A model generated the notes under the pieces. That model ran no database searches. It saw only the letters and a list, made by a program, of their open reading frames with translations, and had not been told where the DNA came from. Both the position numbers and the translations under genes were made by a program. From Oopsacas minuta (Eukaryota; Animalia; Porifera), in NCBI GenBank assembly GCA_024704765.1, contig JAKMXF010000334.1, forward strand, positions 218,664-282,663: 64,000 nucleotides of DNA, given 5' to 3'. Positions 20,587-62,721 of the stretch are shown here, in pieces. How positions within the stretch are numbered: the stretch's first letter is position 1; each line of letters begins with the position of its first letter.

Positions 20587-21616
20587 TTAATACGAAATTC
20601 TTCAGTTTGTACATTTATTTCTTTTTCCTACGTTTTTATTAATTATCCCCGATGTGGGTTGTTGATTATTTTATCAAACATTTTATTCGATTTCTGCATG
20701 CAACGTATTATGCTCTATGTTTTATTTGTTGTTATATTCTATCTTTTCTAGTTTCATTCAAGTTTGCCTTTTCATGTATGTAGAATTTATTAGTGTATAT
20801 ACAGTGTCAACAGGATAAGCCAACTGTTCCTGTTTTCGGATATGTATTGAGGTAAGGTCCCACTACGAGCTTTAATTGGCTCGCTTTTTGTAGTCCACTA
20901 ATTCCAGTCTAATGTAACTGCTTCCCGCGATGCCTCGCTAAATTCCTACAGTCGAAATCGGATTAATTTTGATTATGTATGTGTGTACAACTGTACGTAT
21001 TGTACAAATGAATTAGTGCATAAAATTGTGGCGTAATACACTGTTTGGTGGATTATCGGGGTGATACTGTATCCTGTAATTTGATACTGGGGGATGTTTG
21101 GGATCTTAAAGGTTAGCAGAGTTGAGTCTCCCTCACTATTATTGTTATACTACTTTTCCAATAGAGATTAAGAGATGAAATACAAGAGAGGCACGTATTA
21201 ATGTCCCAATATTATAGTAACAATAAACCTCAGGTTATTTATTAACAATTATATTATTGATTTCTCTTGACTTTACTGCAATGGTTCTCAGTAAAAGTTA
21301 TTTTGAGAATTATGCACCGTTTAGCCTTTATAGTTATACCATAACGTTAGCATGTACGAATAACGTATGACAATATCGCATCCATCCAGGTACCAGGTGA
21401 CCAGCTTTTGACTATAAAACTAATGGGCCAATAATTCCAGCTCCAGGTTACATAATAACCAGCATTCACTCAAACGTAGTGGATAGGTTTTTATGACACA
21501 AAGCTTGAATATTCAAAGATGTTACTCAATATTAAATTTATTATACTTGTATATTTTGTTTTATTACTTTATCAAATCTACTTATAGCAAGAGTCATACA
21601 TAGAGCAGGATTCTAG

Positions 21617-24600
21617 ATGGATAGAGTGAAATCTTACTTCACATCGCTATTCAAGAGTAAAAGTACAGACACAGCTGATCCGTTTAACATATTAGTTTTG
21701 TGTAATGAGTGTCTAAGTCCTGTTCATTCACCTGACCACTACCATAGATGTGTTGAATGTCTTGAAGTTTATGATCTTTGTAATATTTGTATGACCCAAG
21801 GTAAAGGAAGCCAACACACAGAAATCCATGGCAAAGAACATTACTTCTACTCTGAAAACAGACAATTAAATGATATACTCCAGGGTCTTAGTCAGACCAA
21901 ATCTATAGAATCGCTATTCTTCTCTGCTTTTAAGGAATTTTCTACTAAACCTGCATTTGGTAGCTATGATGTTCAGAAAAAAAAGTTCGTTTATATAACA
22001 TTTGGAGAAGTGTTCAAAGAGATTGAGAGGTTCGCTTCTGGATTGTTAGCAATGGGAATCGTACGATGCAATTCTAAAGGCATTATTCCACATCAAATAT
22101 TCGCTATTTGTTCAATTTCTCGAGCAGAATTTTTCATAGCAGACGTGGCATTAATGTTCTTAGGTATAACATCTGCTCCTATTACAGCTTCTGATGATAT
22201 AATTAATTTCAGAGCTATTCTCTTTCAGACAGAATCTGAGACTATTATATGTTCTAAACAAGTGCTATCTAAGGCGAGTAATCTTACTGGAGGTTTATAG
22301 CTTTATATAAAGCGCGAATACAATCGGATTCGAATATGAATTTTCCGTAAAACAAATACGTATCTACTTTTTCAAAAATTTGTAAAATACAGTAAAGTTA
22401 CAGAACAGTACGAGTGTTGGAGTAAGCATCGCGATGTAGCATCGAGTAATGAGCACAATTTAACACTTAATAACTGTCAATTTGCTACCTATTCACCTGG
22501 AACTTGTTGAGTACCTTCATTTTGTTTGGGGTTTTCTCATATAAATAATCTATCTGTATCAAACCTAATCATGCCACAATGACATTGCAAACTTTGTAAT
22601 GCGAAATCTCCATAAAGGAATACAGAGTTATTAAGTGTTTAAGTTGTGCTTATTGCTCGCTGCTAACACCACGCTCATCAGAACAGTAGACTCTGCTTCA
22701 TATAGCCATGTATGACTACCCTATTGTCCGAATACAGATTGGCCTAGAGCAGCCAGATATAATCTTAACTGACTAAGAAATATTTATCTCATATTAATGA
22801 GAAACATTGTGCACATGCACTTTTCTGCCATGCAGGTTTAGCCATATCATAACTGTCTTTTTAATTGATAGGTTTTGACAGCTGTCAGTAATGAGAATGG
22901 AGGGAGTAAAGTCAGATATGTTATTTGTATGGATGAGACCGGAGATACAGTATTATCTCATAAGTCTGTAAATCTGTTGGGTTGGAAACAAGTATGTGAT
23001 GATGGAGAACAGCACTTAGTGGACATGGATTCATTCAAAAGTCAGTTGAATAAGAAAATTTCTGTATATATTCTGATGCATTCGAGTCTAGATAATTTTT
23101 CATTATACATCAGTGATCAGTAAAGACACCGAAATTTAACAAACATCCTTAAAATCCTTCAGAAATTTCATTATTGGCACATTTGAGGCCATTTTTCTAG
23201 AAAGAATTAGATTTGGAAAGTCAAACATTTCTGACCGCGCTCTATATGCGAACATTTATTGCCAAAGATTTTATAGAAAACCAATGGTATAGGGGGATAG
23301 GGAATTGTCAGGGCTATTGTATTAGCCTGTAGCTCCAAAATATAATGAGTTATGACAGTTTAAAGTTAGAGGATAGTGGAAAATTTGCTCATGTCAACTT
23401 GAAACGGTCATAACTCCGTCAATTTTGGAGCTCCATAGTAGGTTCATTCTCTAGTTGCTTTCCCAATCAAAACTATCGTTTTTCACTAATAAATATCAGC
23501 AAATAGTGCGAGATCAGTATTTTTTTAAATCAAAAAATGTTTGGCATTTGGATTAAAATCCGCCAATAATGAAAATTTTGACTGATTTTAAGGATACCTG
23601 TCAAAGTTCGGTGATTTGCTGGTGCATACGTATCGAATTTTATGGAATTGAATATTTTCCTATGGAAAACGATTAAGCCTGTATCCATTCATTTAATGAT
23701 ACAAGGATCATTCATGACTTTCAACTTTATCATTTGTTTAGCATCTAATGATAGTATTTTCACTTTGATATATACAAGTGGTACTACTGGTACCCCTAAG
23801 GGTTGCATATTCACCAGACAGTCATACTATGAATTGATAAAAGGAACTCTGTCAATATCTTCTATCTGTGAGGTATGGTTAGCTTTTCATCCTCCTTCTC
23901 ACCAAATGGAGAGGAGATCTGTTCTTTGTAACATGTGTTCTGGAATGAGAGTAGCGTTTTACAGGTAAATTTAATGTCCTCTCTGTTAGTACGCTCGATC
24001 CTGCGAAATGTAACTGTCCAGATAGATATTAAAATCGGTATATAACTAACATAAGGTATATACAGGATAGCTTTTAATATAATTTTGGATACTGAGTTTC
24101 CTATATTATACTAAGCACAAGAATTCTAGGCATACCATACTAATATTCGTATTGTTTATCAGAATTATACGTATTATTCACTTAATTCTTATGCCGTAGA
24201 ACCACTATAATTAGGGGAGGTCGGGGCGGCGAATCTCCTGGTAACCCTCCATCTTACCTTTATAATTTCGAGTGCAAATGTCTTACCAGAGATTTTTGTA
24301 GTCAATTTGTGTTACCACTTCCTCCAACGATTGTCTTTAAATGAATTTGATTATTATAATATGCCCTAAGGTCGTTGGTTGAATTGAAAATTTGTAATAA
24401 TTTTTCTTCTGAGAAACACAACATTTCAATTCGTCATAGCGAAAATATGTGGTTTTTTGCAGGTTTAGCACAAAAATTGATTATTCAAGAAAACTGATCG
24501 TAGATTTCCCCACTTATAGAGGTAAATTTCATCTAAGCAGGTGATCTAGTGCATCTGACGGGTCGTTTGCTATCTTGGATGCTCTGAAGGCTCTTGACTG

Positions 24601-27600
24601 ATATGTGTTTTTGCACATCTCCCGCGGAGGGTGGTAGGACTGGTTGGCGGGATTGCTGTGTTATGGGCATTGGCGTAGCTGCAACAGGATTTTTGAGGGG
24701 GGCGCAGTCTCTAAAATATATCCAGTTTCCCACCATCCCTTGGTAAAATCATATTCAATAATTTTTGGAGGGGTCTACCGAGAAATTTGGGGGGTCAGGT
24801 CCCCCAGAGGTCCCCGGCGCTACACCATGGTCGTTACAGGTTTGGCAGTTGTGGTTTTTGAATGTGTCGAGTAGGAGGGAAGACGGAAGGGCACCTAACC
24901 CACCTTCCCTAAATGAGAAGGAGTTACTTCTTTTAGTAGTTCCTGATTCCTGGATGGTGACTCGTCAGACCTCCATATTGATTTGGTGGTGTGTTGGGAG
25001 TGTTGTCAGTTTCTGCGTTGCATTGAGCGGTCCTTTCTTTGGGCATGTTTTATTAGAGGTTGAACTGCCGAAGTGCTTCCTTTCGTTCTTTGCTGTCCTG
25101 TCCCTTCCGCATTTAGCACAGATTGCAATTGCTTTGCAGACAGAAACTAGCTGAGAGTAGATGTTTGTTTGTTGATTTGTTTCCTTAATGCTAGTGGGAG
25201 TGTTTTTGAGTGCTCTTCTAGTGATTTAAACCGGGGTGGAATTGAAGTGTGTCTGTGTACTTTTTTCTGTTGTTGTTAGAATGGCGTTTGTAGTCAGATA
25301 TTTGGCACAGGGATATTGGGTTGGGACAATAAGCTGCAAGATGAGGATTTTCTTGGGTTTTGCAGCTATTAGCAGTCGTTCACTTACTGATGCAGCATAG
25401 CTGTGTAGTTTTGGTCCCGTTTTCCTCTCTATGGGGCTAAATAATTCGCTATTGCGGATTTCTGTTTGTAGTAGGGTTGTGAGAAAGTTTCGGGCTATGG
25501 TATTTGTGTCTAAAGTGGAGGGCCTGCATTAGTGTTCTGTACGTGTGTGAGGGGAATTCTGGGAGGTTTAGTAGTGGTAGATAATTCTTTTGTAAAGTTG
25601 TTTTATTTTTGTTCCTTATTGTTCTTGGCTTTTGTCACATACTGTATTCGTCGGGATGTCCAGTTCTAATTGTTCTAGTGTCGCGGCTGCAAGCAGCCTG
25701 ATATAATATGTTTGAATTGCATGCGGTACAGAACATACTAAATTATCAATTGCTTAGGAGATTGAGAGTTTCTGTGGAAATGTAAGCTTGTTTGGTTGTG
25801 GGTGTTCCAAGTAGAAGTATTCGTCACTGTTTAGGATCTTGTATGCGTATGGAGGGCAGGTACGAGGGAGGTTAGTAAGGTAGCTACCATTGGTGGTTGC
25901 TGGGTCTGCTTGTGGGGTGGAGTTTGCAGGTGGTGTTGTAGGGGTGGCTATTGGTGGATCGTTTGGAGGTTTAGAGCTTGTAGGTTGTGAGGGTACATCA
26001 GGTCCTTGTGTCCCAGTCGTTATGCTGAAGTTTGATATATTGGGAAACTCGTCGAAGAATTTAGAAAGCCGTGGCGATCTGTTAATTGGCGAGCCCGTTC
26101 TTGAGTTTGAAGGCTCGTTGGGTGTAGGGACATTTAGCAATGATCTCCTGATTTGTTCACTGGTGAGGTATTGTGCAGCTTTGGAGATCTGTAGTTTGCA
26201 GCTCCACTGGGAAGAATACTATGTCGTTTTCTTCTCGGGACCTGAAACTATTATACATACAGGGACATTTACTATATCAGAACGGCAATAATGTCTATAC
26301 CCGACGGAATTCTGTTCGAAGAAATATGTGTGTTTCAGTTGGAAACAATTCGAAAACACTGCCTTAGGGAATCTCCCTATAGATACTGCACTAAAATGGA
26401 GTTTAGCATATAGATGATAAATACTTATTTGAAAGGATAATTATATATTTCTTAGAGGAGACATGGGCTGTATCATGGAGGACATCTCTCTAGTAAGACC
26501 AACTTTGTTGGCCTGTACCCCCAGATTCTGGTCCAGTCTATATCAACATTACAGAATAATGGTGGATAAAGAGTACAGTTCTATATGTGAATCTTCTCTA
26601 CAAAACTCAGAGAATGATATAGATGGAGTAAGACTAGCACTAGGAGATGTTCTGAATTCTGAAAATATTCCTATTCATGAAGAGGTGATATATTATTTTG
26701 CTATTTAGTCATACTACCTTATTCGATCTAATTCAGGCGCCATTCTAGGTTAAGCGCCGTCTAGAACCAATCATATTTATTTGGTTCAAAGCAGTGGCGG
26801 ATTCTTTAAAAAATTCTGGGGAGCAAAATGGAACTTATCAGAGCTAGTTTTGGATTTCATTATAGAAGACTACACAGTACGCCTACTAGATACATATAGC
26901 CTCACTTAAAGAAGTTAATTATGACCTCCAAAACCATCGCTGTCAGCACTGCAACAGTCAAGAGAAGCTTTAGTGCTATGAATAGAATATTAAGTTGGGC
27001 TAGATTTAGCCTTGATAGCACTAGAGCAAGTGATTTGATGACAATTTCCTTGAGTAGAGAAATTGTGAAAGCAATCAATTTAGATAATGTGTTGGAAAGG
27101 TGGATGATGTAAAAGAGGCGCGTGATTCCATTCTAGCTAATACGCCTTCTTTCTTGTAGAATTTCCAAAAAATTATATTCTTTCTTGTTTACTAATAAAT
27201 TTCAGTTATTCTAATGTTGAAAACTGGGGGGGGGGGGCGATTGCCCCCTTGCCCCCCCGAAGAATCCGCTGTTGGTAAAAATATCCAGCCAACAGACTGG
27301 TAGTGCAGCTCAGTATTGTGTTTTTTGTTCTTTTCAAGTGGGCACCCCCCCCCTTGATACACCGTGTAAATTCCGAAATGCACCAGATCCCGACTGATTT
27401 TAGGCTCCTATATCTGATATATATTTCAGGATATTCAATATTATTCGTCCCCTAATGAACTTCATTTTCTATCCTCAAATCTTGTGGTTAAAACTCTAAA
27501 TAAATAAATAAATAACCCCCTGTCTAACATTTGAAAAGAAATCTCTTAGCATGATTTTGAATAAAATGCAAAATGGTATGAAATATGCAGTTTAGAAGAC

Positions 27601-30600
27601 AATCATATCCGAGGAGCAAATCTCTGACCCAAAATGTATTTGTGAACTATTTGAATTAGACTGCTAGATTTCGCACGGACGTTCTGACGTCGTACATCGT
27701 CCATGCCATTAGGGCATCTCCCTATAAGAGCTGCACTAAAAACGGAGCCTGAATTAGAGCGATTACGGAAGTGCTTATATGAAATTTATTTCGATTTTCG
27801 AAATTAGCAACTCCATTCTGGTATGAATATGTGATTAGGTGTAATAGAGATGAATTCTTAATCATTAGAACATCCTTTTTTTAGCAAACTTTACCTGAAA
27901 TTCAAACTCCACCATCTAATAATGTAGAGCTGTCTAATCAACTACGAGATATAGAAAATAAAGTAATAGAACAGTTTTCAGGAATTCTAGGAGGGAGATT
28001 ACGTATCATCGTTACAGGAGGAGCTCCTACTTCTCCAGAAGTTTTCAAGTTTCTAAAAAGATGCTTCGACTGCTTTGTAAAGGAGAGTTATGGCGCTACT
28101 GAAGTAGGAGCTATAGCGTTAGGAGAGTTTGTGTCTCCAGGTAACAAACTCTAAAATAGTTTCAGTAATGATAAAAGAGTCATATAATAATAATAATGAA
28201 TGTAATTATCAATTCCCAGAGCAGGTATAGTTTGAAAATCGTTCAAATTGGCTATGATGACAAATCAAATTCAATACTGCTTGCACAACATTCGTGATTA
28301 TGTACATGAGGCTTAATTCTAATGCATATGGAACAGTACCGTTCTGATTAGCGAGGGTGTACTGTAATACAGACAATTTCTATAAATCTGATTGTTTTCG
28401 TAGGTGCAGAAGTGAAACTAGTTGATGTTCCTGAGATGGGATATCTGGGGAGTGACGATCCTCCCCGAGGAGAGATTTGTGTCCGCACAACTAACATGGT
28501 TAAGGGATACTACAAAAATGAGAAAGAGACTGAAGAAAGATTCGTAGACGGTTTCTTCCGTACAGGAGATATCGGAATTATTGAGAAAAGTGGGAAAATT
28601 AAAATTATTGATAGAAAGAAGAATCTATTCAAACTTTCACAAGGTATTAACTGTTTATATAGTAATGTAATTGGATTCAATTTATTTGTGAACTTCATAC
28701 ACTATACAACACTGATTCAAGACATACTATGGGATCATATGTTATTAGGACATGTACGTAAAGTAAATTTGATTGTTTCTCATCCATGATTTCTAGCAGA
28801 CTGAAAACTGCGTTTTATTTTTAGCTACGAGCGTACTTCGCCTGCTAGTACTACGCGGTTGCGAACGCTTCGTGTCCACACTCAGGCCTATGGCCCTCGG
28901 GTATATAAACTCATAATCTTAACCGTAGCAAACATGATACTGCCATAATCTATAAATCTGCTTACTTTATATCCCCAAAAGTGAACAAATATTTATGAAA
29001 TGTTGTATACAATATCATATTAGGGCTCAATATATTCGATTATCTCAGTCGTTGAAAGTATGATTCTAACTCAATTTTGAAATTTGCTTACTTTATATTC
29101 ATAAAAATAACAATAAATTTAAATATGATTAATCCAAAAGTGCAAAAATCGGATTTAGTATGTTAGATATATTTAGTGAAGTTTTATTGAATTCTATTTT
29201 AACTTCCTTGATAAACACGAAAAATACATAGTTATGCGACAATTTCAAAATTGCATACCGTAAATCCTTTCCTTGACAACGGACAAACTAACAAACAAAC
29301 AACAATTAAGATTTAATAATATAGAATTTGTAAGGATCCTCGGATATAGAGTAATTGGCAATTTGTAGGTAAATATCAGTAGTCCACCCGATAGATATTA
29401 TTCAAGTAGCTTGGCGCATTTTCTTGCATTGGTATCTAATTATTGAATCGTACTTTGATGTTCATCATCTACATTCTTCAAATGTAAGGTATAAATAGGT
29501 TACTTAGCATCTTTAATCTTTGTAGGAGAGTTCGTTTCACCTGAGCGTATTGAAGGAATATTTTGCTCTAACTCTAACTATATTCAACAGATGTTTGTAT
29601 ACGGGGAATCCTTATGGAATAATCCTGTGTGTGTGGTAGTACCCAATAGAGAATACGTCATTAATTCAGCACTTGCTATGTCTCATCAAGAGTTATCATA
29701 TTCCCAGCTGTGTACTACTACTGGATTATTAGACAATATACTCATGCAAGAGGTAAATGTACTATATTCTTCCAATATTATACATGTAAACTTTACTGTA
29801 TTCTATTATTTGCAATCCATATATCAACAAATGATACAGTTGTAGCCTCCACAAACGTTTCCACGTTTCTTCCAAATTTGGTGTTTATGGAGATTCATCT
29901 GTATGTGCATGGGACTATAGGATTCCCTCTACGTATATTGTGGAAAATTTGTGGCTCAGATTGACATCAAAAGGCAGTGGAGATATCTAATTACTGTATC
30001 CGCGATAAAGTAATTAGATATGTCCATGACCGTTCATTATTCGCGTTTGTAAAATATTTTCAGAATTGCTTGCTACGTTAACATTATTTCTAGATAAGAC
30101 AAGTCTATTCTAAATCAGGCCTATCCCCCTGGGAGGTACCAGTTGCAGTGTTAGTAGAAGAAAACGAGTTTACAGCTACCAACAATCTCCTCACAGCTAC
30201 CTTCAAGCACTGTAGGCCTAGACTCAGTATCAAATACCATGACAAGCTATCAGAACTACACACAGCAGCTGAAGCAAAATTATGTGCACTTACACAGAAC
30301 AAAATGTTAGATGTTGTATCACAGGTGTGTTCAAATTGATAGATACAGGCTGTAGGTTGCGTACACGATATTCATTAGATTAGTTTTAAGTGCCGCTATT
30401 AATGCAAAATTAAACTTTCGGTTAATATGTACATTTCTCAGAAATGGATCACCAATTTTGTACAAATTATATAGGAAATATTCCGATAAGACATACTTCG
30501 GTTAATACGTTATACGTCTAGGTTAATCTCGAAATAGGAGATTTTGACATTTTTGGACTTGTACATATCGCATTATTATCTCAAGTATTATACAATTAGC

Positions 30601-33600
30601 TGATATTTCTCATTAACAATTCGAGAACTTCTGTTTTCATGCAAAATGTAAATTACAGAAATCAGCCCAATAGAATTACGTCACCAAAAATAGTAGATTG
30701 AACGTATAATACGTATTAAACAACTTAGCTATTTTTTGTCTCTCAAAGAATACATCTTATCCGAATTCTAATAATAACAAATTTTTCGAAATTCTATCTG
30801 AGAGCGAAGAGCATCTATGTGAGCGGCGGAGCTAGGCCCAGGTATACTCAGGCCTGGGTAATCATTAAACTCTAGCTACACCCTGATCTATGTAATACAA
30901 ATATATCAGTATAATTCAAATATCTATTCAAACTCTTTTCACAACTAACATCATTGATGACTTAAAGTACAATGGAACCTCACTTAACAGCAGGTTGCCG
31001 TGGGGGTGGGATGGGAAATGATTCGATTCCTTACGATGGGAAATCCTATTGAAGTTCATGCGTGGAAATCCCATATGGGAATCGCATGGAATTCCCAGAT
31101 CCCCACAAGTTTCTCATGGGAATTCCTACCTATACAAGTAAGGGATGGTAAACCTATATTAGTCAAGCATATACCCCCCTGACCATAGGGAGTTTCGCGC
31201 CCCCATGATGGCACGTATTTATTTAATTAATTAATTGTACACTCAGGATTGATAAGAGAAACTGAAAGAACCCCAGGACTGATTTGGCATACAGGTCAAT
31301 CCTAGTGTTCTACCTTTTACTTTTGTTTGTTTGAGAAAAGTATGATATAATCTGTTGGAATTTCACTTGTAGGAATAATAATATTTTTGTCAAAAGAATT
31401 AAAACCCAAAATCCGGACAGCGATTGAACCCAATACTCGTAAAATTTATAATTCTTCATTTTCCAGGTGTTGTCTTTGGATTCTTCCCCAATAAATCTAG
31501 ACAAATCATTCTCTCAGCTAGGTGGAGATTCTCTATCTGCAGTTACTTTAATGATGCAAATCAAGAGTGAATTGAATGTTGAGATTCCTATCAAAGAATT
31601 GTTGCAGTGCTCATTAACCCAATTGGAAGAGTATGTTAATATGCACTCACAAGCCGGAACGAGACAACCATACAATGATAGTGAGTGTATGCGTGTTTAA
31701 ACCTCAACATTACTCATGTATCCTATAGAGGTTTATTTGAACCCCCAAATACTCCTTTATTAACACATTTGATCATTAATGGTTTATTACTAGAGTATAT
31801 ATCAGTTAGGCATAGGGTCATATATTATATATACACATTTAGTTTTGGTAAGGGGATCAGGGAGAAAGTTACTAAGCAGAGTACTCGAAATATTTTAATA
31901 ACCAGACCCATTCTCCACCCATGTCACATGCATCCAACTGTGCTCAAAACAAAATGTGTGTTGTGCATAGTAGACTACGGTTTGTGCTTGTATTTGATTT
32001 CATTTATATGAATTATAGACATTGAGGAACACGTTATGATAGCTCTGTTATAGATTCTTCGAAGAAATCCATTGACAATTCTCTACAGGTTGATTTCAAA
32101 GCAGAGACTCGACTAGACCCTGCTCTATTCATCAGTGGGGGTAACTATACTCCTGCATGGAGATTGACGAGATCTGATTGTATGCACAATTCTAAGATTG
32201 TTTGCTTCCTAACTGGAGCGAGTGGCTTCCTAGGAAGATACATTTTAGCAGACATCCTTCACCTCACTCAATGGCAGGTTAGTACCACCCGAACGAACAC
32301 ACATACAGCGTCGTACACTCCCTAAAGAAGCTGAACTAATGATTGTAATAAATAGCTTGCCATATCATGTTGATTTTGTCAATCGACATAATTGTTTCAC
32401 GTGTGAACACGCACTCGCCCAAAATGGCCCTAGTTGCGCCTCTGTCATTTCGTTTTGCATTTTTGTAGTTTTTTAGGCATATTTATCATGAATGAATGTA
32501 TTTATGTAAATTCATTTTGATTTATCCAAATCCAAGGCTAACTAGAAATACCATGGTGAGGAGGCATGCAGTGTTCCCTCTAAGGAATCCGGGGCGGTAT
32601 CTTAGAGAATTTTCTCATTTTAAGACCTTACCTCCCATAATGATCCTCGCTTTCGAAATGTTTGAGCATTAGGATATTTTGTTGAATTTCTCACTTTATT
32701 GACTGTATCCCGAAAATTTGAGGGAAGTTTTGAAAGAGAGAAAAATGTTGCCTCCTATTTTAACACATTTTTATTTCAGTATTGTAAGGTTTCATACTGT
32801 AGTAATTTGCCTTCTTTACATTTCGCAAAATGTTATACCGCATAATTGTGTGATTGAATTAATTTGTTCATACGAGCCATTGGTTTGGTAGCTTCGCGAT
32901 GGATCACTCCACAGCCATGCAGTTTCGCTGATTCCAAATTTCATTCTTTAAAAATTTTGATAACTACGTATATATTCAGATCTCAAAGGTCCTGATATTG
33001 CATGAAGTATTTATGAAATTTATTATTACAGTAGAAACTCCATGATCCGTCACATAATAGGAAAAGTGTGTAAATCTGACGATCAGATTATAGAGGTCAA
33101 TTTACATGAGATTACAGCAATTTGCTTGAAGATCAATGTCGGATTTATTATAGAGGTGTCCTAGGTTATCCAGGTGTCGGATTCGAGTTTCCACTGTAAT
33201 AATAAATTTCATGAATACTTCATGCAATATCAGGACCTTTGAGATATGAATATATACGTAGTTATCAAAATTTGTTGATAACTACTTGTATATTCATGAA
33301 ATCAACTAAACTGCATGGCTGTCGAGTTTCATCGCGAAACTACCAAGCCAATGGCTCATAAGACTAAAATTAATTCAATTACACAACTATGAGGTATTAC
33401 CAGATATTCAGCGGTCTAGTCTGGACCACGGCTCTGACGAGACCTGACCTGAGAAAAAGCGGACTGGACCCAGGGACGTCGCCACGGGGGGTATAGGGGT
33501 AATGCCCCCCCCTGGCAAAATCTCGTGTCCCGGAGCATGCCCCCCCTGGTAAACTCTTGCCCGGAGAAATATGGTACCAAACCATATTTGTACAATTTCA

Positions 33601-35585
33601 ATGTAACATATATCAGGGTGGACCTTGGGTCACCATTGACCCATGTTCTACTCTGACATATATTACATCGGTTATATCGAAAAATAATCGCGGTTCCTAG
33701 ACTTTGATTAGTTCGATATAACTTGTGTTAACTGTCTATGAGCTGTATAATAGTTTTTAATTCATCAGGTAGTCTGTCTGGTTCGTCCTAGCCTTGACGG
33801 TACTCCAGCTCAACTGCGTCTTAATGCTGAAATGTCAAAGGTTTTAGAGGTAGATGTCTATGACAATATATACTCTAGGAGAGTAAGCGTGTTGGAAGGA
33901 GACTTGTCTAAACCAAACTTGGGGCTGATACCAAATGATGTCGAGTTTTTGATTGAGAATGTTGATATTATAGTACATAATGGTGCTAGAGTATCATTTG
34001 TACTTCCTTACACTAAACTAGTTGCTCCTAACGTAAACTCTCTGCGATTCCTACTTTCTGTGTGTTCTCAAGCAACTCACAGACCTAAACATTTGCACTT
34101 TGTCTCGACTATTGGAGTGTTGAACCTTTCGACAAATTTAGGTATATATTATCTAGCAATAGCATAGGTGCCTATTTTGGGGTTCTGGCTGGCCTAGGTC
34201 GTAGGGCTGGGGGGAGTGGGGGTCAACTGGATGGGTCACTGGGGGTACTGAGCATCCTTGGCACCAAAGAAGTAGCTAGGGGTTACCAGCAACCTCTAGA
34301 TCAACCCATAGAGCTAGATTACTAGATATTCTTGCAATTTTATTGGAGTGGCTAACACCGTACTCCCCGCTGGTGCTTCCTGTATCCCCACAGCAACCCC
34401 AAATAGAATATGCTAGCTGGGCTAAGCCATGCCTACTAATAATAATACATACTTCATCCGGCAAGAACTTATCCTTAACTCAGTTCTCTTTCAGTATTTT
34501 AAAATAGCAATTTATTACCTCCAAATATGGCAAAGCAACCTCGAAATCCGAGACCATGTGTTATTATTAAAAGCTTTGGCCAAAAAAGTTGCCCCCAGAT
34601 TGAGGCTGATTCCTGCTAAGATCGGCGCCTATGCGGAATAGTAAATTCTATCAATACTAGACTAGAACTATCAGTCCGCTTACAAGTACTTTTAAGCATT
34701 TTAACTATCAGATTTAATTTCTAAGTGTATCTATATCAATTGTATCTCTCATATGTATACAAAGACTGGTGATATTTCCCAGGATAAATACAGTTGAAAC
34801 AGGTTTTTTCAAGGGATTTTCTGTTTCCAAATATCTCTAAATCTATAATGACTCTATACATATTTTAAAAGATATAATTATTATTAGGCATTGAATCATT
34901 TCTCAATGAAACAAGCCCTCATGATCCTGCATACATTGCCATCACTACTGGTTACAACCAATCTAAATTCGTTTGTGAGATCTTATTAAAACGGGCCACA
35001 GAATTAGGTTTATCTGCTAGCGTGTCTCGCCCCGGACTTATTGGCCCTCACAGCGTAACAGGAGATACAAACCTCAGAGATTGGACAACCTATTTAGTGT
35101 ATTCTTTATTCAAGCTAGGACTCTCTCCTTTCTCTTCTACAGATTCTAGCCTGAATTCTATAATATCTCACACCCCAGTAGATTATGTAGCTCGCTCTAT
35201 TATATACATTTCCGTTCTGTCAGAAGATTCTAGCAATATGATACCATTCCATCTCGTCGGTCTCGTTGCTAAGAACTATTCACTTTCACAAATACTGAGT
35301 ATTGTGAGTGACACGCTCAGCAGAACTCTCCTTAAAGCATCATTTCAGGAATTTAAAGATTCTCTAATCGCAGCTTCCAAACACGATTCTACCCTCAGGG
35401 CAGCTACACTATTGTTCCATGAAGGTAGATTCACCTTGAAAACTCCTCTACAAGCTTCTACAGAACAAGCAATATCTCTTCTAGAACCATTGGGTGTTAC
35501 CTGTCCTCTAATTTCTGAAGTGTATTACCAGAATATGAGCAGATTCCTAGATTCTAAGCTGTTTGTTAAATCTGATCAGTTGTAG
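21617..35585 (+). CDS. 12-exon NRPS-like carboxylic acid reductase (ZZ zinc finger + adenylation + PCP + thioester reductase), about 1246 aa
   Basis: Hand-spliced exons: 21617-22273, 22872-23040, 23742-23964, 26456-26684, 27885-28140, 28404-28643, 29526-29752, 30094-30324, 31467-31680, 32054-32277, 33769-34141, 34888-35585 (3741 nt, phases consistent; exon 1-3 junctions least certain). Motifs YTSGTTGTPKG, ESYGATE, FFRTGDIG, FKLSQGEFVSPERIE, LGGDSLSAV, FLTGASGFLGRY, GYNQSKFVCE. Confidence 0.88.
23127..23613. mobile_element. MITE in CAR intron 2
   Basis: Imperfect ~30-bp TIRs caccgaaatttaacaaacatccttaaaatc / gattttaaggatacctgtcaaagttcggtg. Confidence 0.65.
24870..26140 (-). mobile_element. Degenerate ORF1/gag-like remnant, possibly a non-LTR retrotransposon, in CAR intron 3
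   Basis: Compositionally distinct, strand-skewed block. The minus frame gives a Pro/Thr-rich segment and a decayed Cys/His knuckle (CAKCG...H...CP), with stops. Confidence 0.35.
26792..27274 (+). mobile_element. hAT deletion derivative retaining the C-terminal dimerization domain (26921-27112)
   Basis: AVSTATVKRSFSAMNRI...R..L...DLM matches the hAT dimerization motif; ends cagtggcggattctt / aagaatccgctgttg. Confidence 0.7.
32836..33396. mobile_element. Long-TIR foldback MITE in CAR intron 10
   Basis: ~32836-33050 and ~33178-33396 are imperfect inverted copies; for example gatctcaaaggtcctgatattgcatgaagtat has a reverse-complement partner. Confidence 0.75.
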
Positions 35586-38623: not shown

Positions 38624-39533
38624 TCAAAATATCTGAAGCCAATTCCAGTCAGTACAAGACACTATTACAATAATTCTTCCTTCATCATCTGCTGTAATTC
38701 CAAATGGATTCTTATTCACAGAAATCTTATGAATCAATTCATAGAGAGGATTGAATATAAGAATAGCATTAGATTCCTGATCAGGAATAAGAATATTTCT
38801 AGAATTATCAATAAAGAAGGAATACGAATACGATTCGGTAACTTGCATTCCAGGTCCTTTAGAAATAATACTCTTCTGTAGAATAAGATTGTAGTCAAAG
38901 AGATGGAGACAAGGATTTGAGTCATCCATAACAAATATGAAATATTCTGTCAGTTTTACGTCAAGAGGGCTAGAGAGCAAATCTTTTCCAAACTGAGATT
39001 TAAATGTTAAAGCATTTGTAAGTATTTGAACCCGCTCATTGCCAGTATCACAAATATAAATATCCCCGTTAGATTTATCAACTGTCAAACCATAAGGGAT
39101 AGTAAATTCCATTTCATCTTCTCCATCTGTCCCTATTCTACAAATATATCTACCATCAAGTTGATATTTGATAATACAAAAAGAACTAACGTAAGGTCCC
39201 TGAGAAATATATAATATATCTCTATAAATAACTAAACAACGAGGATAGCATATCTTTCCTTCACCTACTTTGCCTCCAAATTGAAAAATGTATCTACAAT
39301 AACTATCAAACACTTTGACACAATCATTTTAAAATCTGCAACATAAATATCTACTGTACTATTATCAACTGTAACACCATGTGGATCGAAAATTGTCCCA
39401 CTCTCCTTCCTCCCACACAAGCATTCAGTAGAGGTTGTATCTTGTTCTTATAGTTAACCCTACTAATATTGTCTCTATTCAAATCAAACTCTAAATTTCT
39501 CTCAGTTGAGACCATACTGTTAGCTGTAGCCAT
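38624..39533 (-). pseudogene. NHL-repeat gene, frameshifted and lacking most of the coiled coil
   Basis: MATANSM start; DPHGVTVDNSTVDIYVAD lies in a shifted frame between ORFs 39351-39533 and 38624-39313; NHL repeats resemble those of 7470-8726. Confidence 0.75.
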
Positions 39534-41430: not shown

Positions 41431-61817
<20,387 letters not shown>

Positions 61818-62721
61818 CTAAGTGAGCGAATATAAAAATATTAATAGCAGAACAAATAAATATCATATATCCTTGTAATCAGAAATTCAGTAATCCATAA
61901 CACGTGCGGATTATTAATTCATCACTGATAGAATGCTAACTATACTATCAGGGCAGAAACATGAGAATGGTAAATTCAGATCAACGTAGTTTGTTACGCT
62001 TTGTAGCCATTGATAGCAAGTCTCTATGGAAATTTTGAGATTTGGCTAATCTGTTTACAGTTTAGTTTATATATATTTATATACCCTAAAACAACAAATA
62101 ACTTTACATATGATGAATTCAAATTAAACATAGCATACCATAAATCCTTTCCTTGACAACGGACAAATAGATAGACAGACAACAATTACAATTTATTAAT
62201 ATAGATTTGATTCGGCTGGATCTGCTATAAGTGAGAAAAATCTACTTGAATCATAGGCCATTATTGAACATACAGGATGTCACACTTTTAGAATTGCATT
62301 CTTCTACCCAGGAATTCTAGGAAGAGTATAGACCTGATATGTTATCAATAGCATACCCGATTTAAATCCCGAGATTATTTCTCAATCCGGGATTCCGACA
62401 TTAGCAGCAAATTACGCAACCGCAGTCAAATAATGGACCAATTTTCATTGACAAGAGTTTAATAACCATAATTAATTAGAAATACAGTAAACTGCAGTTA
62501 TAAGTAATAACAAAGTCGGATATAGCGAAATACTCGTTATAAGGATGTTATTCTTGACCCAATATAGCGTGAAAAGTTATTGGTTTTACTCCCTTTATAA
62601 CGAAATACCGCTCATGCAAGAATGAAACCGCAGTTGAGAGTTTACTTAATTATTAAAATATATATTATTAATATTTGCTCTCTGTGTGTATAAAAAACAA
62701 ATTTCTAAATACAGACTTGCC

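What the first reader, a model, noticed from the sequence alone, without database searches (positions are those of the whole stretch)
21617..35585. Intron-containing animal NRPS-like carboxylic acid reductase (A-PCP-R)
Seen: 12 phase-consistent exons spliced by hand give one ~1246-aa ORF. It has a complete adenylation domain (YTSGTTGTPKG, YGATE, RTGD, KLSQGEFV), a PCP with the phosphopantetheine Ser (LGGDSLSAV), and an SDR thioester reductase (TGASGFLGRY; YxxxK in GYNQSK). Established: this A-T-R layout, and KLSQGEFV / LGGDSLS / TGxxGFLGRY in particular, characterise actinobacterial-type CARs that reduce acids to aldehydes using ATP and NADPH; known animal NRPS-like enzymes (Ebony, AASDH) end in different domains. 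Inference: the host genome itself encodes an acid-to-aldehyde/alcohol pathway, possibly for fatty acids since the A domain resembles long-chain acyl-CoA synthetases. Eleven spliceosomal introns argue against bacterial contamination.
Basis: partly seen in the sequence, partly recalled or inferred. Interest (0 to 1): 0.82.

Follow-up and report, generated by a model that had tools for sequence, protein, structure and literature searches.

The report
Sponge gene for acid-to-aldehyde reductase
This animal genome (earlier scan notes, which I did not check, call it a glass sponge) carries a real, spliced and expressed 12-exon gene for a zinc-finger-tagged enzyme built like bacterial carboxylic acid reductases, most likely turning fatty acids into fatty aldehydes or alcohols without coenzyme A; I found no paper describing this enzyme type in animals.

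Summary
Twelve exons (21617-35585, + strand) join into one 1246-aa frame with a ZZ zinc finger, an ACSL-type adenylation domain, a carrier domain and a thioester reductase. All catalytic motifs are intact.

Contigs of one public run, which behaves like RNA, are spliced exactly at introns 6-10. Loose contig ends match the splicing of introns 5 and 11. The adenylation, carrier and reductase exons are therefore joined in RNA. Introns 1-4 rest on conservation only.

A related genome holds the complete orthologue: same 11 intron positions, 69% identity, dN/dS 0.14. Two more genomes hold its 3' part.

The gene is not a recent bacterial insert. It lies near a CBP/p300 gene. Its nearest full-length relatives (26-30% identity) are unstudied ZZ-A-T-R proteins of Naegleria and slime moulds, and bacterial CAR/FadD9 at about the same identity. 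It scores far below NCBI's CAR cut-off. The published CAR types I-V are bacterial or fungal.

I rate this a new variant of a known kind. Substrate and product are inferred. The scan had also noted this gene from an overlapping window.

The parts
21617..22273 (+). Exon 1. Start codon directly after an in-frame TAG. Encodes a conserved N-terminal helix, the ZZ zinc finger (aa 29-75, about 21701-21841) and the first part of the adenylation domain (aa 108-219).
   Evidence: Open frame and Pfam ZZ/AMP-binding. Zinc ligands are conserved in homologues. The fold model matches ZZ domains weakly. The donor is GC here and GT in L002 at the same position.
22872..23040 (+). Exon 2: adenylation domain, N-terminal subdomain.
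   Evidence: 55% identical to L002 with the same boundaries.
23742..23964 (+). Exon 3: A3 P-loop YTSGTTGTPKG (aa 286-296) and the A4 histidine (H329).
   Evidence: Pfam AMP-binding E 3.5e-15; motif alignment.
26456..26684 (+). Exon 4: adenylation domain.
   Evidence: NF041592 is the only NCBIfam hit; 69% identical to L002.
27885..28140 (+). Exon 5: A5 motif YGATE (aa 495).
   Evidence: Pfam AMP-binding. A loose end of an X4 contig at 28402 reads the last bases of this exon, so intron 5 is spliced out.
28404..28643 (+). Exon 6: A7 RTGD (D567) and the start of A8 (IIDRKKNLFKLSQ), an ACSL-like signature.
   Evidence: 87% identical to L002. NF041592 75 bits. RNA joint 28644-29525.
29526..29752 (+). 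Exon 7: rest of A8 (GEFVSPERIE) and the C-terminal subdomain of the A domain.
   Evidence: X4 contig 25 runs across exons 6, 7 and 8.
30094..30324 (+). Exon 8: A10 catalytic lysine (K705, TATFK) and the linker to the carrier domain.
   Evidence: Motif alignment; RNA joints 29753-30093 and 30325-31466.
31467..31680 (+). Exon 9: carrier (PCP) domain with the phosphopantetheine serine S766 (LGGDSLSAV; codon at 31530).
   Evidence: Pfam PP-binding E 2e-12; RNA joint 31681-32053 to exon 10.
32054..32277 (+). Exon 10: linker and the start of the reductase, with the NADPH-binding TGASGFLG motif (aa 869-876).
   Evidence: Pfam NAD_binding_4 and TIGR01746 start here; RNA joint 32278-33768.
33769..34141 (+). 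Exon 11: reductase Rossmann core with CLVRP (R896), HNGA and the active-site S/T (1003-1004).
   Evidence: Pfam NAD_binding_4 E 3e-27. TIGR01746 98 bits. 76% identical to L002.
34888..35585 (+). Exon 12: reductase catalytic Y1037 and K1041 (GYNQSK), the C-terminal subdomain and the stop codon.
   Evidence: Pfam NAD_binding_4. Best solved-structure hits are MxaA and CAR reductase domains. A loose end of an X4 contig at 34142 reads the start of this exon. Three related genomes are 65-67% identical.

Best explanation
This is a functional, host-encoded gene of an animal; earlier scan notes say the glass sponge Oopsacas minuta, which I did not check. It encodes a 1246-aa, single-polypeptide, carboxylic-acid-reductase-like enzyme with the layout ZZ finger, ACSL-type adenylation domain, carrier domain, SDR thioester reductase. 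Proposed mechanism, inferred from intact motifs and from characterised bacterial and fungal CARs: (1) the A domain uses ATP to adenylate a carboxylic acid, most likely a long-chain fatty acid; (2) the acyl group moves to the phosphopantetheine thiol on Ser766 of the carrier domain, primed by the animal's Sfp-type PPTase, instead of to CoA; (3) the carrier swings to the reductase, where NADPH (TGASGFLG, R896) and the S/T-Y1037-K1041 triad reduce the thioester and release the aldehyde, possibly going on to the alcohol. The N-terminal ZZ finger is found in most of the eukaryotic relatives examined and in none of the bacterial CARs aligned. It probably docks the enzyme to a partner protein, as other ZZ domains bind N-terminal peptide tails. 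Shown here: gene structure, splicing of exons 5-12, conservation under purifying selection, domain content, intact motifs and family placement. Inferred: substrate, product, cofactor use and the role of the ZZ finger.
For: One 1246-aa frame from 12 exons. Pfam AMP-binding, PP-binding and NAD_binding_4 on the exon pieces. Motifs A3, A4-His, A5, A7, A8, A10-Lys, the DSL serine, TGxxGxLG, LVR and the S/T-Y-K triad are all conserved in the window and in L002 when aligned with bacterial CARs. The run X4 is covered on exons and barely on introns, and its contigs join exons 6-7-8, 8-9, 9-10 and 10-11 at GT..AG; loose ends fit 5-6 and 11-12. The orthologue L002 has 12 exons, the same intron positions and phases, 1244 aa and 69% identity. 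Its dN/dS is 0.14 overall and 0.10-0.27 in the four regions where it could be computed; dS was saturated for the first 100 codons. Two further genomes keep exons 5-12 or 9-12. NF041592 'carboxylic acid reductase' is the best or only NCBIfam hit for most exons, colinear over profile positions 60-1038. The protein aligns end to end with ZZ-A-T-R proteins of Naegleria-like organisms and Protostelium, and with bacterial CARs. In an A-domain tree, eukaryotic ACSLs fall among these A domains, which favours fatty acids. A CBP/p300 gene lies on the same contig.
Against: No biochemical data exist for any member of the eukaryotic ZZ family. Identity to characterised CARs is only 26-30%, and the summed NF041592 score of about 360 bits is far below the 1300-bit equivalog cut-off. 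The best solved-structure hit of the last exon is MxaA, a four-electron reductase (E 6e-10), ahead of CAR (1.6e-5), so an alcohol product is as plausible as an aldehyde. CAR R domains also reduce aldehydes as a side activity (PMC10168641). X4 is not on record as RNA; I infer this from its coverage pattern and joints. Introns 1-4 are not confirmed by RNA. The ZZ assignment is weak on its own: Pfam 15 bits against a 21.4 cut-off, and Foldseek E 0.04-0.4.
Confidence: 0.72

Rival explanations
1. It is a fatty-alcohol-forming (four-electron) reductase that works like a FAR, feeding ether-lipid or wax synthesis, and does not release an aldehyde. The chemistry is the same up to the thioester; then two successive NADPH reductions follow.
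For: MxaA, an alcohol-forming R domain, is the best solved-structure match of the last exon. CAR R domains have intrinsic aldehyde-reducing activity, about 40% of the acid rate for octanal (PMC10168641). Myxobacterial ElbD, with acyl-CoA synthase, ACP, NAD-dependent domain and acyltransferase, is needed for ether lipids (PMC13012113).
Against: Sequence cannot tell two- from four-electron R domains (PMC10168641). No acyltransferase or ether-lipid gene lies beside it in the window.
Confidence: 0.3
2. It activates and reduces a non-fatty acid, such as an aromatic, amino or keto acid, as part of a sponge natural-product pathway, in the manner of the NRPS-like reductases FmtATR and ATRR or the type V tyrosine-reducing CARs.
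For: Bacterial CARs accept many aromatic acids (my own knowledge). Animal NRPS-like A-T-R enzymes with specialised substrates exist (PMC11869996).
Against: The A domain is ACSL/CAR-type, not NRPS-type. The NRPS-like A-T-R outgroup separates at SH-aLRT 100, and canonical ACSLs nest with it. The A8 region reads IIDRKKNLFKLSQGEFVSPE, which is ACSL-like. No tailoring genes flank it.
Confidence: 0.15
3. It is a recent transfer from a bacterium, or assembly contamination, with no role in the animal.
For: Architecture and motifs are CAR-like. The AU test does not reject a sister position to the bacterial CAR clade (p 0.28).
Against: It has eleven spliceosomal introns, and joints for five of them are seen in RNA-like contigs, with loose ends fitting two more. 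Animal genes lie on both sides. Intact orthologues with the same introns occur in related genomes, with dN/dS 0.14. Its ZZ finger is shared with eukaryotic homologues. It lies outside the sampled bacterial clade (SH-aLRT 100).
Confidence: 0.03
4. It is a decaying or non-functional gene: an expressed pseudogene, or an ACSL with a vestigial tail.
For: It sits on a very long branch, 1.3-2.6 substitutions per site.
Against: There are no stops or frameshifts in 3741 nt. All catalytic residues are kept in two species. dN/dS is 0.10-0.17 in the A, PCP and R domains.
Confidence: 0.03

Closest known systems
Bacterial type I carboxylic acid reductases / FadD9 (NCBIfam NF041592; Nocardia, Mycobacterium and Segniliparus CARs; PDB 5MSC, 5MSP)
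   Same: Same A-PCP-R order in one polypeptide. The alignment is colinear from A3 to the end of the R domain. The KLSQGEFV, LGGDSLSA, TGxxGxLGR and YxxSK motifs are shared.
   Different: Only 26-30% identical. Summed NF041592 score is about 360 bits against a 1300 cut-off. The sponge protein has an N-terminal ZZ finger that the aligned bacterial CARs lack. Its A domain groups with eukaryotic ACSLs and not with bacterial CAR A domains. It is encoded by 12 exons.
Uncharacterised eukaryotic ZZ-A-T-R proteins (Naegleria fowleri FDP41_013167 and FDP41_013591, Protostelium nocturnum, Clastostelium, Physarum, Heterostelium album PPL_05336, Willaertia, Anaeramoeba; the rotifer Didymodactylos carnosus A0A813UFL8)
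   Same: Same four-part layout. The ZZ finger is present in most members examined. The alignment runs end to end (q29-1245). The window's nearest rows in all trees are Naegleria-type.
   Different: Only 27-29% identical, on a long branch with weak placement (SH-aLRT 81-87). The rotifer copy belongs to an amoebozoan-type branch; a common animal origin is rejected (AU p 3.6e-11). None of these proteins has been studied, as far as my searches show.
Eukaryotic long-chain acyl-CoA synthetases (ACSL3-like)
   Same: The A domain is of this type. It carries an ACSL-like A8 signature, and ACSLs nest among the ZZ-A-T-R A domains in the tree.
   Different: ACSLs stop after the A domain and hand the acyl group to CoA. 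Here a carrier domain and a reductase follow in the same mRNA.
Animal NRPS-like reductases: mollusc FmtATR (bursatellin pathway) and NRPS-like glycine betaine reductase ATRR (PMC11869996)
   Same: Animal-encoded, intron-bearing A-T-R enzymes that reduce a carrier-bound thioester.
   Different: Their A domains are NRPS-type and act on amino acid or betaine substrates. FmtATR has a formyltransferase domain and ATRR a second R domain. The NRPS-like A-T-R proteins used as outgroup separate at SH-aLRT 100.
Fungal CAR types II-IV and tyrosine-reducing type V (PMC10168641)
   Same: Eukaryotic A-T-R acid reductases.
   Different: From my own knowledge, their A domains are NRPS-like. An Aspergillus NRPS-like protein falls in the outgroup of the full-length and A-domain trees. 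I did not scan fungal CARs for a ZZ finger.

Membership tests
Carboxylic acid reductase (EC 1.2.1.30; NCBIfam NF041592 equivalog) | Single polypeptide with adenylation, phosphopantetheine carrier and thioester reductase domains in that order | tested here: met
   Pfam hits on the exon pieces in that order. One frame. RNA joints link the domains.
Carboxylic acid reductase (EC 1.2.1.30; NCBIfam NF041592 equivalog) | Score at or above the curated whole-protein cut-off (1300 bits) | tested here: not met
   Only exon pieces could be scanned. Their colinear hits sum to about 360 bits. The protist homologues, scanned whole, reach 428-566 bits.
Carboxylic acid reductase (EC 1.2.1.30; NCBIfam NF041592 equivalog) | Catalytic residues: A3 P-loop, A4 His, A10 Lys, carrier Ser, TGxxGxLG, reductase S/T-Y-K triad | tested here: met
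   All are conserved in the window and L002 in an alignment with Nocardia, Mycobacterium and Streptomyces CARs.
Carboxylic acid reductase (EC 1.2.1.30; NCBIfam NF041592 equivalog) | ATP- and NADPH-dependent reduction of free acids to aldehydes after phosphopantetheinylation | not testable with these tools
   Needs expression and an enzyme assay.
Carboxylic acid reductase (EC 1.2.1.30; NCBIfam NF041592 equivalog) | Placement inside the bacterial type I clade | tested here: not met
   The bacterial CARs form a clade at SH-aLRT 100 that excludes the window in the full-length and R trees, and a group at 92 in the A tree. A sister position is not rejected (AU p 0.28).
Eukaryotic ZZ-A-T-R proteins (unnamed, uncharacterised) | N-terminal ZZ-type zinc finger in front of the A domain | tested here: met
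   Ligands C29, C32, C45, C48, C55, C58, H67 and H71. Five cysteines are invariant across seven family members. Pfam ZZ passes its cut-off in P0044 and P0163 and is weak in the window. The best fold matches are ZZ domains, at weak E-values.
Eukaryotic ZZ-A-T-R proteins (unnamed, uncharacterised) | Groups with the eukaryotic members in trees | tested here: inconclusive
   The window is nearest to the Naegleria-type proteins in all three trees, but support is only SH-aLRT 81-87 and the branch is long.
Long-chain acyl-CoA synthetase (ACSL) | ACSL-type A domain | tested here: met
   ACSLs nest among these A domains (SH-aLRT 94 for the joint group). NCBIfam long-chain-fatty-acid--CoA ligase models are the second-best hits for exon 6.
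Long-chain acyl-CoA synthetase (ACSL) | Stand-alone enzyme ending after the A domain, with CoA as acceptor | tested here: not met
   The carrier and reductase exons are spliced on to the A-domain exons.
NRPS-like A-T-R reductases (Lys2/AAR, ATRR, FmtATR) | NRPS-type A domain with an AMP-binding_C subdomain | tested here: not met
   No AMP-binding_C hit. The NRPS-like A-T-R outgroup separates at SH-aLRT 100.

The most novel reading that the evidence does not exclude
Glass sponges, together with Naegleria and slime moulds, use a so far unrecognised sixth clan of carboxylic acid reductases: a ZZ finger, an ACSL-type A domain, a carrier domain and a reductase. This clan would give eukaryotes a CoA-independent route from free, possibly very-long-chain, fatty acids to fatty aldehydes or alcohols, for example for ether lipids or waxes. 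The ZZ finger would dock the enzyme to a partner or a membrane site. The fusion may have arisen in eukaryotes from an ACSL and not been inherited from bacterial CARs.
Probability: 0.3. Interest if true: 0.72.

Novelty: new variant of a known kind. Interest (0 to 1): 0.6.

Why it matters
Animals are thought to make fatty aldehydes and alcohols from acyl-CoA with FAR-type reductases. Carboxylic acid reductases are treated as bacterial and fungal enzymes, in five published types.

An expressed, selected CAR-like gene in an early-branching animal adds a lineage to the short list of animal carrier-protein enzymes. It also points to a whole eukaryotic family that nobody has assayed, one member of which is found in the pathogen Naegleria fowleri.

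For biocatalysis, a eukaryotic CAR with an ACSL-type pocket could be a new catalyst for making long-chain aldehydes. For evolution, the patchy spread across sponges, a rotifer, amoebae and heteroloboseans gives a testable case of ancient inheritance with losses against eukaryote-to-eukaryote transfer.

Tried and rejected
- **RNA runs.** The run search listed no run on record as RNA. I laid the four listed runs anyway, and one (X4) proved RNA-like. Only 5.9 kb could be laid, so introns 1-4 stay untested by RNA.
- **Whole-protein searches.** The spliced protein has no reference, so I searched exon pieces and then used full-length homologues as queries.
- **AU test.** On the 48-row mixture-model tree it did not finish in two tries. 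I repeated it on 20 rows under LG+G4.
- **Papers.** Searches for CARs in metazoa, amoebae, sponges or Naegleria found nothing on this family. A coral paper only speculates about an EST. The Oopsacas genome paper mentions neither fatty acids, reductases nor horizontal transfer.
- **Other checks.** A phage search with the intron-6 repeat found nothing and was a poor choice of collection. No tandem repeats occur in the gene.
- **Rejected readings.** Bacterial contamination, two separate genes, a pseudogene, and an NRPS-type amino-acid reductase; the reasons are under the rival explanations.
- **Not determined.** Whether this gene is already modelled in a public annotation of the genome. The last-exon searches returned no annotated or near-identical protein from any source.

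Full report

Yes. Stop-free stretches in the three + frames between 21.6 and 35.6 kb give twelve pieces. Scanned one by one against Pfam, they hit AMP-binding (pieces 1, 3, 5, 6), PP-binding (piece 9) and NAD_binding_4 (pieces 10-12). There is also a weak ZZ zinc-finger hit at the very start.

I fixed each splice junction by comparing the window with an orthologous locus found later (L002). The resulting exons are 21617-22273, 22872-23040, 23742-23964, 26456-26684, 27885-28140, 28404-28643, 29526-29752, 30094-30324, 31467-31680, 32054-32277, 33769-34141 and 34888-35585. Ten introns are GT-AG. Intron 1 is GC-AG here, and the orthologue has GT at the same place.

**2. Is it transcribed and spliced as one unit?**

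The run search listed four runs of one sample, none on record as RNA. Laid on 28300-34200, three of them cover exons and introns evenly, as DNA would.

The fourth, X4, has depth of roughly 200-1100 on bins that contain exon sequence and 0-18 on purely intronic bins. Its contigs carry GT..AG joints that skip 882, 341, 1142, 373 and 1491 nt, exactly my introns 6, 7, 8, 9 and 10. Loose ends at 28402 and 34142 read the last bases of exon 5 and the first bases of exon 12.

So the exons for the A core, the A C-terminal subdomain, the carrier domain and the reductase are joined in RNA.

Three caveats apply. The contigs are short, so no single record spans the whole gene. X4's RNA nature is my inference from its coverage and joints.

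**3. Is it conserved?**

I searched the last exon against 1.84 billion representative proteins. One close cluster came back (65% identity), and everything else was at or below about 40% over comparable lengths.

That cluster led to ENA metagenome contigs. L002 holds a complete orthologue of 12 exons with the same 11 intron positions and phases, 1244 aa and 69% identity. pS is 0.64 and pN 0.18, giving dN/dS 0.14. By region it is 0.13 in the A domain, 0.10 in the carrier domain, 0.27 in the linker and 0.17 in the R domain; dS was saturated for the first 100 codons. Intron lengths differ freely: intron 10 is 1491 nt here and 65 nt there.

Two further genomes, 65-67% identical in the last exon, keep exons 9-12 (L004) and 5-12 (L005/L006) with the same boundaries.

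The contig is animal. A CBP/p300 gene (bromodomain, CBP-type RING) and an NHL-repeat ORF lie downstream, and an NLR gene lies upstream. Earlier notes of this scan name the genome as the glass sponge Oopsacas minuta. I did not test that. One related contig has a record name that looks to me like a sponge-microbiome study, which is a guess from the name.

**4. What is it?**

All catalytic motifs are intact in both species when aligned with Nocardia, Mycobacterium and Streptomyces CARs:

- A3: YTSGTTGTPKG (aa 286-296)
- A4 histidine: H329
- A5: YGATE
- A7: RTGD
- A8: DRKKNLFKLSQGEFV
- A10 lysine: K705
- Carrier serine: S766 in LGGDSLSAV
- Reductase: TGASGFLG (869), R896 in CLVRP, S/T 1003-1004, Y1037 and K1041

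NCBIfam's 'carboxylic acid reductase' model NF041592 is the best or only hit for exons 1, 4, 5, 6, 7, 8 and 9. The hits are colinear over profile positions 60-1038. The summed score of about 360 bits is far below the 1300-bit equivalog cut-off.

The spliced protein aligns end to end (residues 29-1245) at 26-30% identity with two groups. One is bacterial CAR/FadD9. The other is a set of eukaryotic proteins with the same four-part layout, mostly including the ZZ finger:

- a Naegleria-like metagenome protein (P0128) and two N. fowleri paralogues
- Protostelium, Clastostelium, Physarum and Heterostelium (PPL_05336)
- Willaertia and Anaeramoeba
- the bdelloid rotifer Didymodactylos carnosus

The zinc ligands of the ZZ finger are conserved across the family. 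An AlphaFold model of residues 1-89 has mean pLDDT 69. Its top PDB matches are almost all ZZ domains (CBP, PRT1, HERC2, p300, p62), but at weak E-values of 0.04-0.4.

**5. Trees**

- **Full length.** The sampled bacterial CARs form one clade (SH-aLRT 100) that excludes the window. The window and L002 sit on a long branch (1.8) among the eukaryotic proteins, nearest to the Naegleria type, with weak support.
- **R domain alone.** The result is the same: 81 with the Naegleria type, and outside the bacterial clade at 100.
- **A domain alone.** Canonical eukaryotic ACSLs (fish ACSL3b, a plant and a chytrid) fall among the eukaryotic ZZ-A-T-R A domains (joint group 94), apart from the bacterial CAR A domains (92). 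It is my main reason to favour fatty acids as substrate.
- **AU tests on a 20-row set under LG+G4.** A single sponge-plus-rotifer clade is rejected (p 3.6e-11). That grouping was named after I had seen the tree. A sister position of the sponge branch to the bacterial clade is not rejected (p 0.28).

The deep origin is therefore open. It could be vertical descent with many losses, or an old transfer from a protist or a bacterium. The ZZ finger, shared with eukaryotic members and absent from the aligned bacterial CARs, argues for membership of the eukaryotic family.

**6. How it most likely works**

By analogy with characterised CARs, I propose three steps. ATP-dependent adenylation of the acid comes first. 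The acyl group then moves to the phosphopantetheine on S766. NADPH-dependent reduction in the SDR domain releases the aldehyde.

Sequence cannot say whether reduction stops at the aldehyde. The last exon's best solved-structure match is the alcohol-forming MxaA. CAR R domains also reduce aldehydes as a side reaction (PMC10168641).

The ZZ finger probably mediates protein docking. That is inference from what other ZZ domains do.

No partner or tailoring genes lie beside the gene.

**7. Comparison with what is known**

The published CAR types I-V are bacterial or fungal (PMC10168641). Known animal carrier-protein enzymes with R domains are mollusc FmtATR and the NRPS-like glycine betaine reductase, alongside Ebony and ACSF4-U26, which lack one (PMC11869996).

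Those enzymes have NRPS-type A domains. This one is ACSL/CAR-type with a ZZ finger. My paper searches found no description of this family in animals or protists. The Oopsacas genome paper does not mention it.

**8. Verdict**

This is a new variant of a known kind: a eukaryote-specific, ZZ-tagged, ACSL-type carboxylic acid reductase, here in an animal. It is expressed and under purifying selection. Its function is inferred and not shown. Interest 0.6.

Noticed in passing
window 21586-21619; L002 1900-1931: The start codon is directly preceded by TAG in both species (…TTCTAG|ATG here, …TTTAG|ATG in L002). The AG could serve as a splice acceptor. An earlier scan note reports spliced-leader acceptors in front of start codons in this genome.
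   Followed up: partly
window 22274-22871 (intron 1): Intron 1 has a GC donor (AAG|GCGAGT) in the window, while the orthologue has GT at the same position.
   Followed up: partly
window 28900-29480 (intron 6); copy at 62120-62208: An interspersed repeat lies in intron 6. Summed contig depth rises to 97,000-380,000 in all four runs over 29088-29284, against about 50-300 nearby in the DNA-like runs. A second copy, 83% identical, lies at 62120-62208.
   Followed up: partly
window 32952-33273 (intron 10): An inverted repeat with 89-nt arms, 97% complementary, 144 nt apart, looks like a MITE. Intron 10 is 1491 nt here and only 65 nt in L002.
   Followed up: no
window 24001-26000 (intron 3): A stretch of unusual composition: GC 0.42, GC skew +0.25 and AT skew -0.22, with overlapping low-complexity ORFs on both strands. 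It is probably a transposon remnant.
   Followed up: no
window 38624-39313 (-), 46460-55887 (-): An intronless NHL-repeat ORF, followed by exons of a CBP/p300-type gene (bromodomain at 54200-54538, CBP-type RING at 52929-53273).
   Followed up: partly
window 57009-57230 and 58540-58600: Two long (TAA)n microsatellites lie about 1.3 kb apart.
   Followed up: no
P0168 (1833 aa, Logan contig) and P0263: A relative fuses an FAD-binding/berberine-bridge-type oxidase in front of the ZZ-A-T-R unit. This suggests a coupled oxidase-reductase pathway in an unknown organism.
   Followed up: no
P0268 (Didymodactylos carnosus, UniRef A0A813UFL8): The bdelloid rotifer's ZZ-A-T-R protein groups with the amoebozoan Clastostelium (SH-aLRT 98 in the 48-row tree, 91 in the 20-row tree) and not with the sponge gene. 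It is a likely separate acquisition.
   Followed up: partly
L002 3432-4377, L004 700-3550, L006 1-1439: Tc1/mariner-, ZBED- and pogo-type transposase fragments sit inside introns of the orthologues. This explains their very different intron lengths.
   Followed up: no
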